Assembly (NCBI GenBank): GCA_021613535.1
Contig: CP075497.1
Location: 5,394,001 to 5,458,000, forward strand
From: Adineta vaga
Taxonomy: Eukaryota; Animalia; Rotifera
Length of the DNA: 64,000 bases
Direction of reading: 5' to 3'
In this document: positions 54,086 through 61,700 of the stretch, in pieces
Layout of the letters: every line of letters begins with the position of its first letter
Numbering within the stretch: position 1 is the stretch's first letter
Made by a program: the position numbers and the translations under genes
The notes under the pieces: generated by a model
The model's input: the letters and a program-made list of their open reading frames with translations, nothing else
The model's database searches: none
Told to the model about the DNA's origin: nothing

Positions 54086-55044
54086 ACTTTAGAAAACCTT
54101 TCATTGTATATAGATCAATACATACCATTTCCATTTTGTGTTTGAACACAATGTCTATTCAACTGACACATAGGTGAAGAGTATTTATATGCATATGACG
54201 AGAAAAAGAAATCAATGAAAAATGATGTTAACCGAGCATTTTCAATTGTTTTATTCATTTGATGGCATTGGATTAATGGGAAAAAAAAGTCGAAAGAAAT
54301 GAGATATCTATCGATTTCACCTTATCAATTTGATGATCTTGTGTTCAATTGCGGAACGAACGATAGTTTTCATATATCAACAGTCGATTGAAACAAATAC
54401 AAAAGTCCAATCAACGAACATTAAATCGATGATAAAGAAGAAGAAGAAGAAAAAAAGTGATGAAAATGAAGCAGAAGAGATTCATTTGCTCTTCTTTCTT
54501 TGTATAAATGTGTTTTTTTATCGAAAAGAACCTTTCGTGTTCTTTTAATTTACTCCTCCTCACGACACATACTGACATTTGAAACTAACGCGAACAATAA
54601 CAACATTGATGAATATATACATCGTATTGTTAGTGATTTATCAAATCTATCAAACGAAGGAAGAGAGAGAGAGAGAAAGAGAAAGAAAGAAGCATTTTCA
54701 TGGATGATGCCATTTTCAATTTGATGCCGTTTGAACTTTCAATATTCGATAGCTAGACATATAAATCACGAAGTCTAACTAATTGAAAACGTATGATACC
54801 TCCGATAACACAATTCATTGGTTGTTGCTTCTTCTTTTTCATCAGTTTTTTTTATAACTCTACCATCATCATCATCATCATCATCATGATAAAACGAAAA
54901 AGAACACTAACAGAGAACAAAAATGACAGTCGTCATCATCATCAAATACTTGTTAGATCGTGCTTTAGATTTCAAAATCACTCGGAATAAGGAGAAGTTT
55001 ATTTCAAAAAAAAAAGAAAAAGAAGGAGAAGAGAAAACAACTTT

Positions 55045-58000
55045 CTAACAAGTCAATAAATTTAATTTCCATTTTGGATCAATTGTTAACATTGGTTCAG
55101 GTTTATAAACTTTCATTTGATCAAAATATCCTTGACGAAATTCATTTTGATCATGTAAAGTTACTGTTAACCAAATGATATCCGAATATTTCTTTGTTAA
55201 TATGTTTAATTGTTCATATACAATCGATGCTAATTGATCAACTTGTAAATATTGAAGTAGAATTAAAACAATTTTTTCAATACTATCAATATCCATTGTA
55301 ATTGCATTGAGAATTGTACCAATATTTGCGAGAAGATACTTCGTATAACGATATTCTAAAGCATTTGTTGATGAAAGTAAACGATTTTTTTCAAGTTGTT
55401 GAATAAGTAAAGGAAGAATATCTTGTCGAATACGACGATCAATAAAATCCGAACAAAGTTCGCATAAACATTCAATGGTTGTTAAACAACGTATACGAAT
55501 ATTAACATCGAAATCAAAGAAACGATGAATTAAACCTGGCCAAATTTTATGAACTAATGGTAAAAATAAGTTTTCATCAATTGTTGAAAGTAATTGTGCT
55601 AATGATGGAAATGCATCGAGAACATATGAACGTACATGAACATTTGAATGAGATATGAAATGTTGAAAAACATCGACAATGGAAACGAGCATTTGATGCC
55701 ATGGATATTTCTCTTCTTTTTTCTCCTCATCAGTTTCATCTGTAGAAGTATTCGTTGGTTTAGATTGCTGTTGAAGTTCAAGAGCGAAGTCAATCAATGA
55801 TTTTGATGGTAAAGAATTTGTAGAATATTTTGTTTTCCTTATACCAACAATATCGATAACTTGTTGACAAAATACATTTAAAAATTGAAATGTTAATTCA
55901 ATACATTCAATCGATGGTAAACATGATAATTCAAGTAACAACTGTTCAATAACATGTGTCATAATTGGAAGATTAATTACCTGAGTATTTCCTAATCGAA
56001 TAAATTCAATTAAGATTAAATAACCATCATAAGATGATGTTTGTAATTTTCTTAATGATGTATCAATGATATATTCCGATTGAGTTACGAGAAAAGATGG
56101 TAGATGACCTGAAAATGATAGTAAACATACGAATGAAGTTTGATGAATTATTGTAAAGATTGATGAATGGCAAAGAAGAAGTAAAGGTATATAATCAATT
56201 AGATATTCAGTTTGATTAGGTGATGTTAAAGTACGTAAACATTGAAGGAGATAATAGATCGTTAGATTTCGAACAGAAACAGGTACTTCTACGATGGAAT
56301 GAGATCGTTTTTTTCTTCGTTTTGAATGTTTTTGATTATTATCATCACAAATTAAATCAGTAAGTAATGATAAAAGTAGTTGATATCCTTCAATATTTTC
56401 GAATTTGTTTTTTTCAAATAGAATTGAAAGAAGATAGAAGATTTTTTGATTGTTTTCATCGGTTATTTTTTTTCGATTGATTTGTTCGAATAAATAATCG
56501 GTGAATTTTGAATGTGATGTTATAAATACTTTCATAATTTGTTGAATTTCATCATGAACATCAGATTTCAAATGTTTATAAACTGAATCATAATCAGCTT
56601 GATGAAAATTTTCATAATCTTTACTTGGTAATGAAGATCCATTGAGAAGATTCAAATGACTTCGTAGAATAATATCGAAATCAAGTGTTTGAAAAATAAA
56701 ACGAAGTAATTTATCAGTAAATGTATTCATATCGAAAAGAAAATCAATATGACGATGAATAAATGTATAATAACCAATGAATAATTGTAAACGCCATCGA
56801 CGATCCGTATATGTTGATATATCTTGTTGTTGATCAAGTAATTGAAAAAGATCAGTTTGACATTCGATCAAAAGATGATCAGATAACTTAATTGTTGATG
56901 AATTGAATATTTCAAATATAAATTCATTCTCATAGGTAAGAATCGATGATTCTGATGATAATGGTAAAGATGGTAAGTCAGATATTGATTCGATTGGTAC
57001 TAGAATAGAAGTGTTACTAAATAAATAGTTTCTTTTCTCTTTTCTTATAACTTACATTGAAATAATTTTTCTAGTAAACGTTTTAAGATAATCTCATTTT
57101 GATCATCTTTTATGGATGAAACAAGAACAAGCATGCTTTTCAATGCAATATTTGAAGATATCTTTAACCATGTTGAACAAAAGCTTAGAATTGTCAACAT
57201 AAAAATTGCTAATGCACGACGAACAGAAACACTTCCATGATTGACATAATTTTTTGTTAAACGTTGCAAAATTGGTGCGATATGTGCATCAACAATTGCT
57301 AACCATTGATCATTTCGTTCAACAACAAGATCACGAAGTTCATTCTTTATTGGATTCGAATGTTTTGATGAACGAACAGCACTTATTCGAATAATATAAC
57401 TCAATAGAGTCAAATTTATTTGAACAAGTCGTTGATGAATAGAACCAATATCTTGTGTTAATGTTTTTAATATGCCCGGTAAAAAACAAGCTATGATTTG
57501 TCCAATAATTACTCGATATTCATTCTCATTTTCATTCTTATTGACATATATTATTGACCATAGTGTATCAAGAATATTTAGTCGATAATCTAAAGAATTG
57601 ATCTTTTCATAGAATTGAAGTAAACATGAAATATAATGACCAATGATTGGTAGATTTTGATTAAAATTTCCTAGAAATTCTCGATAGAAAAATGTTGAAT
57701 TGGTTTTAATTGAAAGACAAAATGCTCGAAAAAATCGAATAAATAAATCTTGTTGAACTTCATCATTCGTTGTCATAATTCGTTTCGTAAGAATAATACT
57801 AATTATACAAAGTAAATCATCTAAAACTTTCTTTGTTGATATGGGAATCAATTGAAATAATGAAATAAATTGCTGAAGAAGTTCGTCAAATATTGATGGA
57901 TCTTGAAAACGAGAAAATTGACGTAAAAGTAATATCGATGGAATATATAAACTATCGTCTTGAATATTCGTCTCTTCTTGTAAACGACGATAATGACATT

Positions 58001-58112
58001 GTTGAATAAGAGAAAAACATGAACGAATGTTATCAATTGTTGGTTGTAGGAGAACATTTCGAAGAGTAATATCAAGATTGAGAATAAGTTGTGAACTAGT
58101 ATTAGAAGACAT
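55045..58112 (-). CDS. TTI1: TELO2-interacting protein 1 (TTT complex, HEAT repeats), 2 exons
   Basis: ACFLPGI; LVVERNDQWL; ENLFLPLVHKIWPGLIHRF; LCSDFIDRRIRQDILP are TTI1-like motifs; intron ~57000-57055. Confidence 0.85.
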
Positions 58113-58114
58113 GT

Positions 58115-58542
58115 TTAGGAAGTTGATTGTAAAGATTGTGATGCTTGACGAGTTTCTTCACGTAAACGACGTTCTTCGAGAACTTTTCGACGAGCTTCAA
58201 GTTCCTTTTCAGCTATTACTTGATCAACGTCTAAAGAAATTTTATATTCAACAAAAATCAATTCTGAAGTCTTTATTTACCTATTTTTTCTGTTTCACCG
58301 GTATTTAAATTATATTTTGTAATAAAGCGATTACCAGTTATTCGAGCAACTTGAACACTATGTGGAATACCAGTTTCTTTCTCTGTTTTATCAGCTCTAT
58401 TCGCAATGAAATAGCCTGTGTATCCCCAAACAATAAAAAATGCAAATGTATTGACAATACCACGAACTTTTTGGATATCTTTAAAGTTTCTTCGTTTAAA
58501 ATAAGCTATCTGTTTACGCCACTCTGCCAATGAAAACCGCAT
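58115..58542 (-). CDS. 125-aa single-pass membrane protein of unknown function, 2 exons (58542-58281, 58230-58115)
   Basis: MRFSLAEWRKQIAYFKRR...FAFFIVWGYTGYFIA (TM)...DVDQVIAEKELEARRKVLEERRLREETRQASQSLQSTS*; canonical 50 nt intron keeps the frame. Confidence 0.8.
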
Positions 58543-58738
58543 TTAGTCTGAAAACAAATTTTATAAAATAGAATTTGAAAAAGAAAAGAAGAAAATGATC
58601 TTGTTCGAAAGAAACGCGTGTATTTATGTGTACATATCACTGTTGTTTTGTTCGGAAGATAACAAAAAAAAGAGAGAGAAAGAAATATGGAGACACCGAG
58701 TTTTGGTTTTTGCACAGAAGAAGAAGACATCTGACATT

Positions 58739-61700
58739 TTACAATTGTACAACGGGAATGGAATTTCCATGAATGGTTGATTGCGTATCAGATTCGGATT
58801 TTGTGGTCGATAAAAAGAAGATGTTTTGAAAAAATTCATCAGGATGATGGATTTGATTTTGATATTTTTCAATGATTTTAGTAATTCGACTTTTCCGTAG
58901 AGAATAAGCTGTTTGAGAACTGTAGAAAAAAGATGCAAAGAAAACATTTATCGAATGAAATAATTCTATTTTTTTTTTGTAGATAACCTTTGACTATCCT
59001 CTAAACGTTTTCGACGACTTAGATTATATACAGCTTGTCGAAGATAATGTGATAGAAGATGAAGTGGAATCACCATTCCATCAAGTAATGGAATACTAGC
59101 ACATGCGGATTGCATTCTAAAACAAGAAATTATTGAATATTTTCATTCCTTTAATATAACTCCAATATACCGTTGAGCATTTGAATTGAGTGATATACGA
59201 AATAGATGATTTCTCAAAGGATGAATACCAATAATAGATATATCGCGAGGTTTTCCTGATTGTTCCTGAGCTAAATAGAGAAGGATTGATAGTAACTCGA
59301 AGACTAAACTTGTATGCGTATACAAACCAGGTAAGATGGAATCAAGATCATCACGAAATTCTTCCAACCAAACTATTAATATTCGCATTTCTGAACCTTG
59401 ATTATCTCCTAGAACCAACATTCAATTCAAAGATCGATATGAAAAGAAAAAAACTATTACTAACCAGAAAATTGATGTGGTAAATAAAAAGCCATTTCTG
59501 TTGTTAGATCAACCCAATATAAGATACTATCTTTACCATCGATATCAACTAGAGTTTTTGAAATGGCATTGGTATCGACTTTAAATAGAAATGATTTAAG
59601 AGAAGAATATTTTCTTATCTAATGAATTACTTGACTGGGCTTTAGCAGTTGTTTTCCAACTTGTTTCAACATTTCCTGTCCAACCACAATGTCGTTTAAC
59701 TTCGACAACTGATCCAAATTGTGAAAACATTGTTAAGAAAGCTGGATTTAATTCTTCAGGTATTTTCTAAAACAACAAACACAAATCATCTTATTAATAC
59801 ATACTATTTCTCCTATCACTACCATATTTGAGAATGAACTATCAAGTGTTGATTGATTCTTTTTTAAATAATAAATTTGTCCTGTACAATGAAGTATTGG
59901 TGAGATTTGATCCAATTTTTTAATATCATCTATAAATGTTTCACTATCGGAATTTAACAAATGAATTCTTGGTTGAAGACGATCAAATAGTTTTGTATCA
60001 TTCTAAAAATTCAATGTATTCTTTCAAACATAGAAGCTTAATTCGAATGATTACCCAATGTTTTCCACGCATCAGATGATACATTGCATCTAATGAACCA
60101 AATCCATAATGTGATAGAAATAGTCGAATACTTTGAAAATGTGTTTGACATCTATATAGAATTGTGTATGAATAAGATTTGATGATGAAGAAGAAAACGA
60201 TTTACTCGGGTGGTTTACATTCAGGTTGAGGTTTTTCATTCGAAAGATGAGCACGTTGATTTGCTTGTTCTTCAATTGATATTTGTTTGGTTTTCAATGA
60301 TCGAAAGAGCGTTAATTTTTCTTCATCACGTTTAATTATTGAATTTAACGTTGGAATACTTAATTCACTACGAAAAGAAGTGAATGTACATTCCGTTCAT
60401 TGAACAATTTACCTTTTAGCACGTTCAGTTTTTGTTCCATGTGAAAGAAAAGATCGATCTCGATGATCGATAGGAGTATTGTTAGCCGGCGGTGAAGAAC
60501 TTTTTCCATTTTCATATTCAATTCGTTCATTTGACTAGAAGAAAACCGATTTATATGGAATAACGAAAGAAAGTATAGATACTTTATTCTGCGGTAATAA
60601 TGAAGTTGATAAAGGATTATGACGGAAATTTAATGTCCAAATATTTTTACCAAATAATCCTCGGCAAAGTAAGAGAATCGTTGGCATGCCTAAATAATCA
60701 GATAGCAATACTTCATTTTCAACAATTCAAGTCATTAGCAAACCATGATTATCAGTAATTGGTAATTCAGTCATAGCAAATAAAGTATTTCCATTAATTG
60801 CAAAATATTTGAATGTTGTATTAGCAAATGTTGATTCATCTAACCAATTACGACAAATATCATTTTTCAAATGTAATACAGCCTAAAAGAAGCATCTCTA
60901 TACTTGATCGTCCGAGAACTAAACATGGCAACTTACTTTATGTTCAAAAAGAACAAACATTAAATATTCTGCTGCTTCTGCTACACGTTGAGATGCGGGA
61001 TGAAATTCTTTATCCTTCTTACAAACAAGTCTATCAGCTGACTAGATGACATAATTGATTAGTTCCATTCGAGAAGAAAGAAAACATCTATTTATGTTAC
61101 TATACCTGTGCTTTTTCTCCCGATATACCTAATTCAATAATTTCACAAAGTTTATATAAATTTTCATAATCATCAAGTAACATTGGTCGTTCAATAAGTA
61201 ATGTTACTAATGTATTATATGTTGCAACACATGTTGAATGCATTTCACGTGTATGATCTTTCGGACTTCGATGTAATTGTGTATCGATAAATGTACACAA
61301 ACGTTTAAGTACATTTTTCCATGTATCAATAGCTAATCATAAAAATTGAATCTTTTTTTTTCGAAAAGATATTCAAAAACACATACGTAATTGACAGATA
61401 GGATCTGTTACAATGGAGATCAATGTATCGAGTGCAGCTAAGAATAATTGTGAATCATTAGTGCCTTTTTCACAGATTTGAATGACTGCATGACTGACAT
61501 AACCAGCAGTAGGATCTTGAAGAAAGAAAATCTCGCAATTAACATTGTTTTAACTTTTGATATTTGTATAAGATTAGATGAACATTAAAAGAAGAGGAAT
61601 ATCTTACCTTTTTTAACATTATCTTCATTTTGTTCTTGTTGTCGATCGAAATGTGCCGCTAATGAACATGCTAATCGAATTGTACCTATTGTAATACAAA

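What the first reader, a model, noticed from the sequence alone, without database searches (positions are those of the whole stretch)
58110..58548. Probable bicistronic mRNA: an AUG-free upstream membrane-protein ORF stops 2 nt before the TTI1 start
Seen in sequence: the spliced 125-codon ORF ends TAA-AC-ATG directly into TTI1, leaving no room for a 3' UTR, poly(A) site or intergenic promoter. The ~375 nt upstream ORF has no internal ATG in any frame; by my rough estimate about half a dozen would be expected at this composition. Its start context is weak (T at -3, C at +4: ctaaATGC), whereas the TTI1 start has A at -3 (aaacATGT). An in-frame stop ~45 nt upstream of the TTI1 ATG excludes an N-terminal extension. 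Established knowledge: a weak first AUG plus AUG depletion is the signature of leaky-scanning bicistronic eukaryotic mRNAs. Inference: one transcript yields both an unknown TM protein and the TTT chaperone subunit. An alternative is SL trans-splicing at the acceptor 58231-58232, which would give a monocistronic TTI1 mRNA.
Basis: partly seen in the sequence, partly recalled or inferred. Interest (0 to 1): 0.82.

Follow-up and report, generated by a model that had tools for sequence, protein, structure and literature searches.

The report
Conserved rotifer two-protein mRNA (microprotein + TTI1)

Summary
On the minus strand a spliced 125-codon ORF runs from ATG 58542, through a 50-nt intron at 58280-58231, to the stop TAA at 58117-58115. 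It ends TAA-AC-ATG at the TTI1 start (58112). The 377-nt spliced stretch holds no ATG in any frame.

- Orthologous loci from 12 bdelloid lineages keep the same pair. The stop-to-ATG distance ranges from -32 to +23 nt.
- Between the two starts there are 5 ATGs in 4,496 nt, all within 23 nt of the first AUG. TTI1 of the same loci has 252 in 13,995 nt.
- Dipeptides that could create an out-of-frame ATG do so in 0/30 (exon 1) and 0/16 (exon 2) cases, against 192/330 in TTI1.
- The first AUG has U at -3 and C at +4 in 12/12 lineages.
- cDNA-like contigs from two lineages begin with the spliced-leader 3' end (CAAGAG), joined 5 nt before the first AUG, and run through both ORFs.
- The internal intron acceptor is missing in three lineages, so internal trans-splicing is not the conserved route.

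The small protein has relatives only in bdelloids. This is a new member of a known kind, the leaky-scanning bicistronic mRNA. The scan also flagged a similar, unverified case at SLX4 in this genome.

The parts
58548..58560 (-). Polypyrimidine tract and AG acceptor (AG = 58549-58548). This is the inferred spliced-leader trans-splice site of the bicistronic mRNA.
   Evidence: The motif ttttcag|ACTAAATGCG is shared with most orthologous loci. In related lineages the cDNA contigs replace ...tttcag with CAAGAG exactly at this boundary. CAAGAG is the 3' end of the SL, whose genes occur in at least 44 exact copies in this genome.
58543..58547 (-). Gene-specific 5' UTR of 5 nt (ACUAA). It places U at -3 of the first AUG.
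   Evidence: U at -3 is invariant in 12/12 lineages, while positions -1, -2 and -4 vary.
58281..58542 (-). Exon 1 of the small ORF (AUG1 at 58542-58540, codons 1-87 plus 1 nt). It encodes a basic N-terminus and a transmembrane helix.
   Evidence: Exon 1 is 60-85% identical to 26 bdelloid proteins.
58231..58280 (-). Phase-1 intron of 50 nt (GTAAAT...TTTAG). It contains no ATG.
   Evidence: The same position holds an intron of 45-1,742 nt in nine lineages and none in three.
58115..58230 (-). Exon 2 of the small ORF (a coiled-coil tail), including the stop TAA at 58117-58115.
58113..58114 (-). The 2-nt spacer (AC) between the small-ORF stop and the TTI1 AUG.
   Evidence: The orthologous spacing ranges from -32 to +23 nt.
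55045..58112 (-). TTI1 coding region (AUG 58112-58110, stop TAG 55047-55045, with introns).
   Evidence: Pfam TPR_TTI1_N and TPR_TTI1_C. The first 352 residues are 100% identical to residues 1-352 of the A. vaga protein I4U23_028974.
54998..55003 (-). AATAAA poly(A) signal, starting 42 nt after the TTI1 stop. It is the only canonical signal seen for this transcription unit.
   Evidence: No AATAAA or ATTAAA lies between -60 and +400 of the TTI1 AUG in the window.
58739..58741 (-). Stop codon of the upstream gene (RALGAPB orthologue), 189 nt before the SL acceptor.
   Evidence: The upstream region is colinear with the Rotaria gene that carries Pfam RALGAPB_N.

Best explanation
One SL trans-spliced mature mRNA carries two independent, conserved coding regions.

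Shown for related lineages and inferred for A. vaga: the pre-mRNA receives the bdelloid spliced leader at the acceptor 58549-58548. This gives a 5' UTR of roughly 28 nt, assuming the ~23-nt leader recalled from the literature (its length was not measured here), that ends ...GAG-ACUAA.

Inferred: scanning 40S subunits meet AUG1 (58542) in a poor context (U at -3, C at +4). Some initiate there and make a 125-aa single-pass membrane microprotein.

Inferred from the selection signature: the remaining subunits scan on through about 380 nt that selection keeps free of AUGs in all three frames. They initiate at the next AUG (58112, A at -3) and make TTI1, the TELO2-interacting subunit of the TTT chaperone.

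The stop of ORF1 may sit just before the TTI1 AUG or overlap it, because nothing has to happen between the two ORFs.
For: 1. Anatomy in the window: TAA-AC-ATG, no ATG in 377 nt, weak context at AUG1 against a better context at AUG2, and no AATAAA or ATTAAA from -60 to +400 of the TTI1 AUG.

2. Conservation in 12 bdelloid lineages:
- The spacers are +2, +23, +20, +1, -32, -11, +4, +3, +1, +14, +14 and +8 nt.
- U at -3 and C at +4 of AUG1 occur in 12/12 lineages.
- A purine sits at -3 of the TTI1 AUG in 10/12.

3. ATG density between the starts is 5/4,496 nt. In TTI1 ORFs of the same loci it is 252/13,995. Internal Met is 0/1,471 against 60/4,665. All 5 ATGs lie at +16 or +20, have weak contexts, and open ORFs of 2-8 codons (one of 62) that end far upstream of TTI1.

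4. Codon-level avoidance. At-risk dipeptides form ATG in 0/30 cases (exon 1, codons 9-87) and 0/16 (exon 2), against 192/330 in TTI1. Fisher tests give 3e-11 and 2e-6. From:
- Tyr41 before a G-initial codon is TAC in 12/12 lineages, whereas Tyr14 and Tyr44 are TAT in 11/12.
- Asp88 before Val is GAC in 10/10, whereas other Asp codons are GAT.
- Lys76 is AAG where Trp follows (5/5) and AAA where Tyr follows (5/5).
- Synonymous sites are otherwise heavily turned over: median dS is 1.1 and dN/dS is 0.18.

5. Transcript evidence in relatives:
- L002 and L038 begin CAAGAG|ACT.., which is the SL 3' end, exactly where genomic or pre-mRNA copies read ..tttcag|.
- L001, L002 and L038 then run through ORF1 and a complete or near-complete TTI1. 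L001 ends at AATAAA.
- Contigs bridging the junction were assembled in seven runs.

6. The reading-frame relation between the ORFs varies among lineages (spacer mod 3 = 0, 1 or 2). This excludes a fusion by readthrough or frameshift.
Against:
- Short-read contigs cannot prove that the SL end and the TTI1 3' end sit on the same molecule. Overlapping transcripts could be merged by assembly.
- The cDNA-like contigs cannot be proven to be RNA from splicing, because the lineages concerned lack the ORF1 intron.
- The counts across lineages are not phylogenetically independent.
- Five lineages tolerate an AUG at +16 or +20, one of them with a 62-codon ORF.
- Two lineages have a pyrimidine at -3 of the TTI1 AUG.
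- The genome-wide initiation consensus of bdelloids was not measured. 'Weak' and 'strong' rest on the general eukaryotic rule.
- Translation of either ORF was not observed.
Confidence: 0.7

Rival explanations
1. Two separate mRNAs. TTI1 gets its own 5' end inside the small ORF, either by SL trans-splicing at the cis-intron acceptor (58232-58231) or from an internal start site. The small-ORF mRNA ends early inside TTI1. Short-read assembly then merges the overlapping transcripts.
For: Bdelloids use SL trans-splicing, and this genome has many SL genes. Exon 2 is ATG-free, so an SL-exon 2-TTI1 mRNA would be translatable. Contigs cannot phase the two ends. Three lineages have AATAAA directly before the TTI1 AUG.
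Against: - The intron, and hence its acceptor, is absent in L006, L001 and L029/L038, yet the arrangement is kept.
- ATG avoidance covers exon 1 (0/30 at-risk sites). An mRNA starting at exon 2 would not need that.
- The window has no AATAAA or ATTAAA from -60 to +400.
- No contig showed an SL junction inside the small ORF. L039 is simply truncated.
- The ORFs overlap by 11 and 32 nt in two lineages.
Confidence: 0.12
2. A single bicistronic mRNA, but TTI1 is reached mainly by termination-reinitiation. Ribosomes that finish the small ORF stay on the mRNA and restart at the nearby AUG, as in calicivirus or influenza B stop-start sites.
For: Stop and start are always close, from -32 to +23 nt and within 4 nt in 5 of 12 lineages. 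A stretch 30-60 nt upstream of the TTI1 AUG is unusually conserved at the nucleotide level, for example Arg109 CGT in 11/12 and Leu110 TTA in 10/10.
Against: - Reinitiation does not explain removal of AUGs in all frames from the whole 125-codon ORF, nor the conserved weak context of AUG1.
- Efficient reinitiation after a long ORF normally needs a dedicated RNA element. RNAalifold found no conserved pairing in the junction region, with 0 pairs.
- A 32-nt backward move would be needed in one lineage.
Confidence: 0.1
3. The upstream ORF is only a regulatory uORF or a chance ORF. No functional protein is made, and the ATG-free stretch is simply a long TTI1 leader.
For: There is no Pfam family, no relatives outside bdelloids and no structural match.
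Against: The ORF is kept open at 118-129 codons in 12 lineages, with dN/dS of about 0.18 at dS of about 1.1. There are 32 invariant residues, the phase-1 intron position is conserved, and the fold is confidently predicted (pLDDT 77.6).
Confidence: 0.04

Closest known systems
Leaky-scanning bicistronic nuclear genes of green algae (Chlamydomonas, Auxenochlorella; PMC7896298, PMC11892635)
   Same: - A short ORF1, often a small membrane protein such as TOM22 or OST4.
- A weak Kozak-like context at ORF1.
- Under-representation of AUGs before ORF2.
- A very short inter-ORF spacer (median 40 nt in Auxenochlorella).
- Conservation across deep divergence.
   Different: - This case is an animal.
- The mRNA 5' end is made by spliced-leader trans-splicing.
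- The ORFs overlap in some lineages.
- The mechanism has been tested by mutation in algae, but here it is inferred from selection signatures only.
Animal dicistronic or uORF-microprotein mRNAs (from my own knowledge: Drosophila dicistronic genes, MOCS2A/2B, MIEF1-MP, ASDURF-ASNSD1)
   Same: Two conserved proteins come from one capped mRNA, and the downstream ORF is reached by ribosomes that skip the first AUG.
   Different: ORF1 here is long (125 codons) and wholly AUG-free. The partner is TTI1, for which I found no report of a bicistronic arrangement. None was found for rotifers either. A 2021 paper states that operons and polycistronic mRNAs had not been reported in rotifers (PMC7986045).
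SL-resolved operons of nematodes, tunicates and chaetognaths
   Same: The same trans-splicing machinery is used. The upstream junction (RALGAPB stop, 189 nt, then the SL acceptor; 55 nt with AATAAA in L006) looks like such an operon junction.
   Different: Between the small ORF and TTI1 there is no intercistronic region, no acceptor and no poly(A) signal. The pair is therefore not resolved into monocistronic mRNAs.
SMIM26-like and other single-pass mitochondrial microproteins
   Same: The size and layout match: a short basic N-terminus, one transmembrane helix and a charged tail. A protein-language-model search scores 0.94 for two arthropod clusters and 0.88 for SMIM26-like.
   Different: No sequence similarity is detectable by an HMMER profile against 1.84 billion representatives, and there is no fold match. 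This is a lead only, not membership.

Membership tests
Leaky-scanning bicistronic mRNA | Both ORFs lie on one mature mRNA (related lineages) | tested here: met
   Contigs L001, L002, L003 and L038 run through ORF1 and complete or near-complete TTI1. L002 and L038 start at the SL 3' end, and L001 reaches AATAAA. Caveat: these are short-read assemblies, not single molecules.
Leaky-scanning bicistronic mRNA | Both ORFs lie on one mature mRNA in A. vaga itself | not testable with these tools
Logan records of the window's own genome are withheld from the look-up of encoding contigs.
Leaky-scanning bicistronic mRNA | Sub-optimal initiation context at the first AUG | tested here: met
   U at -3 and C at +4 in 12/12 lineages, with neighbouring UTR positions variable. 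This is judged by the general eukaryotic rule; the bdelloid consensus was not measured.
Leaky-scanning bicistronic mRNA | No, or few and weak, AUGs between the two start codons | tested here: met
   The window has 0 in 377 nt. The 12 lineages have 5 in 4,496 nt, all within 23 nt of AUG1, against 0.018 per nt in TTI1. At-risk dipeptides form ATG in 0/46 cases beyond codon 8.
Leaky-scanning bicistronic mRNA | ORF2 output depends on the strength of AUG1 and on inserted AUGs | not testable with these tools
   This needs reporter mutagenesis or ribosome profiling.
SL-resolved operon junction (between the small ORF and TTI1) | An intercistronic region with a poly(A) signal, followed by a trans-splice acceptor before the downstream AUG | tested here: not met
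   The spacer is 2 nt in the window and -32 to +23 nt elsewhere. There is no conserved AG acceptor, and no AATAAA or ATTAAA in the window.
Termination-reinitiation (TURBS-type) | A conserved structured or rRNA-complementary element upstream of an overlapping stop-start | tested here: inconclusive
   Stop and start are close, but at -32 to +23 nt the distance is variable. RNAalifold predicts 0 conserved pairs. Complementarity to 18S rRNA was not tested.
TTI1 (TELO2-interacting protein 1) | N-terminal and C-terminal TTI1 TPR/HEAT domains | tested here: met
   PF24173 at 5.9e-25 (profile positions 12-328 on residues 21-332) and PF24181 at 1.1e-30.
SMIM26-like microprotein | Detectable sequence or fold homology | tested here: not met
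   The profile search finds only bdelloid clusters. There is no Pfam hit and no fold hit. The only signal is a language-model resemblance of 0.88.

The most novel reading that the evidence does not exclude
The pairing is functional rather than incidental. The membrane microprotein would work with TTI1 and the TTT chaperone, for example by tethering or timing PIKK (ATM/ATR/DNA-PKcs/mTOR) maturation. Alternatively, it would belong to a wider bdelloid class of leaky-scanning dicistronic genes that sets fixed translation ratios for DNA-damage-response factors. A second, unverified candidate upstream of SLX4 was flagged in the same genome. This would link an unusual mode of gene expression to the extreme DNA-repair biology of bdelloids.
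Probability: 0.1. Interest if true: 0.8.

Novelty: new member of a known kind. Interest (0 to 1): 0.6.

Why it matters
Conserved mRNAs that encode two full, unrelated proteins are still rare in animals. A 2021 paper held here says polycistronic mRNAs had not been reported in rotifers.

- **Clean selection signature.** Codon-by-codon avoidance of out-of-frame AUGs is maintained across bdelloid lineages that differ by roughly one substitution per synonymous site. This gives a ready-made natural experiment for leaky scanning on a trans-spliced mRNA.
- **Annotation.** Gene finders split or miss such pairs. No public A. vaga protein appeared among the small-ORF hits.
- **New protein family.** The work defines a bdelloid-restricted microprotein family.
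- **TTI1 dosage.** Production of TTI1, which is needed for the stability of all PIKK kinases, would be tied to how often ribosomes skip an upstream start codon.

Tried and rejected
- **Joined spliced model.** The joined 125-aa model of the window was not sent to any search tool. Exon 1 was searched by reference, and natural full-length orthologues (P0005, P0008, P0016) stood in for it. Exons were joined only inside scripts, for counting and translation.
- **Identity of the small protein.** There is no Pfam family. The HMMER profile against 1.84 billion representatives found only bdelloid clusters plus 5 spurious long proteins. Foldseek against PDB gave no hit at E<=0.001, and the ESM-Atlas shape search gave TM<=0.43.
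- **Complex prediction.** TTI1 residues 1-870 with the microprotein (L006 lineage) returned 'no answer' with score 0.00. This is not evidence for or against binding.
- **Conserved RNA structure at the junction.** None was predicted.
- **Fusion by readthrough or frameshift.** Rejected, because the frame relation differs among lineages.
- **N-terminal extension of TTI1.** Rejected, because of in-frame stops 3-195 nt upstream in all lineages and a Pfam N-domain that starts at residue 21.
- **Internal SL junction.** L039 starts inside ORF1 but has no SL sequence, so it is a truncated contig.
- **Second copy in the genome.** None was found.
- **Monogonont or other non-bdelloid TTI1 loci.** The word-based search returned bdelloids only, so the age of the arrangement beyond Bdelloidea is unknown.
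- **Pfam on upstream exons.** It gave nothing. RALGAPB identity rests on colinearity with the annotated Rotaria gene.
- **SLX4 lead.** I saw the stop-13 nt-ATG junction in L037, but did not work out the spliced ORF.

Full report
**What is there.** The genes lie on the minus strand.
- A spliced ORF starts at ATG 58542. Exon 1 runs to 58281, a 50-nt GTAAAT...TTTAG intron occupies 58280-58231, and exon 2 runs to the stop TAA at 58117-58115.
- Two bases (AC) follow, and then comes the TTI1 ATG at 58112.
- The product is 125 aa with no internal Met.
- TTI1 is confirmed by Pfam TPR_TTI1_N (5.9e-25, profile positions 12-328 on residues 21-332) and TPR_TTI1_C (1.1e-30).
- The genome has six contigs totalling 100.8 Mb. 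The TTI1 exon is 100% identical to the N-terminus of Adineta vaga protein I4U23_028974, whose model starts at this same ATG.
- A TGA lies in the TTI1 frame 45 nt upstream of its AUG.

**Is the ATG-free stretch more than chance?**
- The spliced 377 nt and the unspliced 427 nt between the two ATGs contain no ATG in any frame.
- This 430-nt gap is the longest of 1,485 ATG-to-ATG gaps on that strand of the window.
- Shuffles give 7.5 ATGs expected, with P(0) = 2e-4. Permuting synonymous codons while keeping the protein gives 1.7 expected, with P(0) = 0.036.
- The other long ATG-free runs in the window are G-poor antisense strands of genes. This one has 18% G.

**The small protein is real but has no known family.**
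- Exon 1 finds 26 further proteins at 60-85% identity. All that carry names are bdelloid rotifers of the genus Rotaria.
- Correctly spliced or intronless orthologues also keep exon 2.
- Thirty-two residues of exon 1 are invariant.
- Across 12 lineages the median dN/dS is 0.18 at a median dS of 1.1.
- No Pfam family matches. A profile search of 1.84 billion representatives finds only bdelloid clusters.
- AlphaFold (pLDDT 77.6) gives a long helix over residues 5-57 that includes the hydrophobic stretch 29-47, then a short helix, a beta hairpin and a C-terminal helix over residues 89-123.
- The model matches nothing in PDB or in the ESM Atlas by shape.
- A language-model search points to arthropod hypothetical proteins (0.94) and to SMIM26-like microproteins (0.88). 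This is a lead only.

**The arrangement is conserved.** I collected orthologous loci from genomes, metagenomes and run assemblies and defined the two starts, the intron and the stop in 12 lineages.
- All 12 have the small ORF immediately upstream of TTI1. RALGAPB lies further upstream where the contig is long enough.
- The distances from stop to TTI1 AUG are +2 (window), +23, +20, +1, -32, -11, +4, +3, +1, +14, +14 and +8 nt.
- The frame relation therefore varies, which rules out a fusion by readthrough or frameshift.
- The phase-1 intron is 45-1,742 nt long in nine lineages and absent in three.

**AUGs are selected against.**
- Between the two starts, the 12 lineages together have 5 ATGs in 4,496 nt (0.0011 per nt). 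The TTI1 ORFs of the same loci have 252 in 13,995 nt (0.018 per nt).
- Internal Met is 0/1,471 against 60/4,665.
- All five ATGs lie at +16 or +20, at the His-Glu and Glu-Trp dipeptides. They have weak contexts and open ORFs of 2, 6, 8, 8 and 62 codons that end far upstream of TTI1. Exon-1-only loci show the same +20 ATG with a 2-codon ORF.
- Dipeptides that can create an out-of-frame ATG do so in 5/20 cases within the first eight codons, 0/30 in the rest of exon 1, and 0/16 in exon 2. In TTI1 the figure is 192/330.
- Internal controls within the ORF make the point without statistics:
  - Tyr41, which precedes a G-initial codon in most lineages, is TAC in 12/12. Tyr14 and Tyr44 are TAT in 11/12.
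  - Asp88 before Val is GAC in 10/10, whereas the other Asp codons are GAT.
  - Lys76 is AAG in the five lineages where Trp follows and AAA in the five where Tyr follows.
- The lineages are related, so the Fisher P values overstate independence. But synonymous sites elsewhere in the ORF are heavily turned over.

**Start contexts.** AUG1 has U at -3 and C at +4 in all 12 lineages, although positions -1, -2 and -4 vary. The TTI1 AUG has a purine at -3 in 10 of 12. That a pyrimidine at -3 is weak is the general eukaryotic rule. I did not measure the bdelloid consensus.

**The 5' end is made by trans-splicing.**
- Every locus has a polypyrimidine-AG acceptor 5-6 nt before AUG1. In the window this is ttttcag|ACTAA, with AG at 58549-58548.
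- The A. vaga genome holds at least 44 exact copies of ...TTACAACTTACCAAGAG|GT in SL-RNA-like genes.
- I recalled this sequence from the literature on rotifer SL. The genome search is what validates it here.
- Contigs L002 and L038, from two different lineages and studies, begin CAAGAG|ACT... exactly where genomic or unprocessed copies read ...tttcag|ACT....

**Transcript continuity in relatives.**
- L001, L002, L003 and L038 are 3.2-3.3 kb long. They start within a few nucleotides of the trans-splice site, contain ORF1 and a complete or near-complete, uninterrupted TTI1, and end in the 3' UTR. L001 ends at AATAAA.
- Contigs bridging the ORF1-TTI1 junction were assembled in seven runs.
- L039 starts inside ORF1 without any SL sequence, so it is simply truncated.
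- The limits are real. These are short-read assemblies. The lineages concerned lack the ORF1 intron, so splicing cannot prove an RNA origin.

**Mechanism.**
- The best reading is a single SL-capped mRNA on which some 40S subunits bypass the weak AUG1 and scan an AUG-free ORF1 to reach the TTI1 AUG.
- Termination-reinitiation could contribute, given the short stop-start distances. But it does not explain the AUG depletion or the conserved weak AUG1, and no conserved RNA structure is predicted at the junction.
- In the window no AATAAA or ATTAAA lies between -60 and +400 of the TTI1 AUG. The only canonical signal starts 42 nt after the TTI1 stop.

**Comparison with what is known.**
- The closest described system is the set of leaky-scanning bicistronic genes of green algae. 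They have a short ORF1 that is often a small membrane protein, a weak ORF1 context, AUG under-representation and a very short spacer, and the mechanism has been verified by mutation (PMC11892635; PMC7896298).
- Animal dicistronic and uORF-microprotein mRNAs are the same kind of thing. That comparison rests on my own knowledge.
- I found no report of a bicistronic TTI1 or of bicistronic mRNAs in rotifers. A 2021 paper states that operons and polycistronic mRNAs had not been reported in rotifers (PMC7986045).
- This is therefore a new member of a known kind. Its particular features are a trans-spliced 5' end and occasional ORF overlap.

**Context from the scan.** The scan's notes list a similar, unverified signature upstream of SLX4 in this genome. 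I saw its stop-13 nt-ATG junction but did not verify the ORF. A complex prediction between TTI1 and the microprotein gave no answer and is not used as evidence.

Noticed in passing
window 58548-58741 (-); L006 5940-6000; L005 1-75: The junction upstream of the small ORF looks like an SL-resolved operon junction. The RALGAPB stop lies 189 nt before the SL acceptor in A. vaga. In L006 the distance is about 55 nt, with AATAAA overlapping the stop. Contigs L004 and L005 retain this intercistronic sequence, which fits unprocessed polycistronic precursor RNA or contaminating DNA.
   Followed up: partly
G000 C5:9.88-9.93 Mb and 10.91-10.93 Mb; C2:8.68-8.69 Mb; loci L015-L018: SL RNA genes (…GCTTATTACAACTTACCAAGAG|GTAAATA…) occur in at least 44 exact copies. 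Many form head-to-head pairs about 162 nt apart, grouped in a few clusters. Variant leaders (TTAAAAC.., TTACAAT.., TTACAAA..) also exist.
   Followed up: partly
window 58231-58280 and orthologous loci (L022 4263-6004, L026 484-957): The single phase-1 intron of the small ORF ranges from 45 nt to 1,742 nt among bdelloids and has been lost in three lineages. TTI1 is a single uninterrupted 935-aa ORF in genomic contigs of the L006 lineage, but is split by introns in A. vaga.
   Followed up: partly
window about 58140-58175 (-), codons 106-115 of the small ORF: A stretch encoding E-E-R-R-L-R-E-E-A-R, 30-60 nt upstream of the TTI1 AUG, is unusually conserved at synonymous sites. Arg109 is CGT in 11/12, Leu110 TTA in 10/10 and Arg111 CGT in 10/12, whereas other Arg codons vary freely. 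No conserved pairing was predicted. Complementarity to rRNA was not tested.
   Followed up: partly
G000:C6:11271895-11272402 (L037 about 1496-2003): The scan's note s1-482701 proposes a second AUG-poor small ORF that ends 13 nt before the SLX4 start. I saw the ...CAT TAA, 13 nt, ATG junction and an ATG-free run of about 300 nt, but did not resolve the splicing or conservation.
   Followed up: partly
L022 6137-6142, L026 1088-1093 and L019 2923-2928: In three lineages (two Rotaria-like and L019) an AATAAA hexamer sits directly in front of the TTI1 AUG. It could be only an A-rich start context plus the TAA stop, or a poly(A) signal for a short small-ORF-only isoform.
   Followed up: no
window 54866-54889 (-): A perfect (ATG)8 microsatellite lies about 110-135 nt downstream of the TTI1 poly(A) signal, in the intergenic region.
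   Followed up: no
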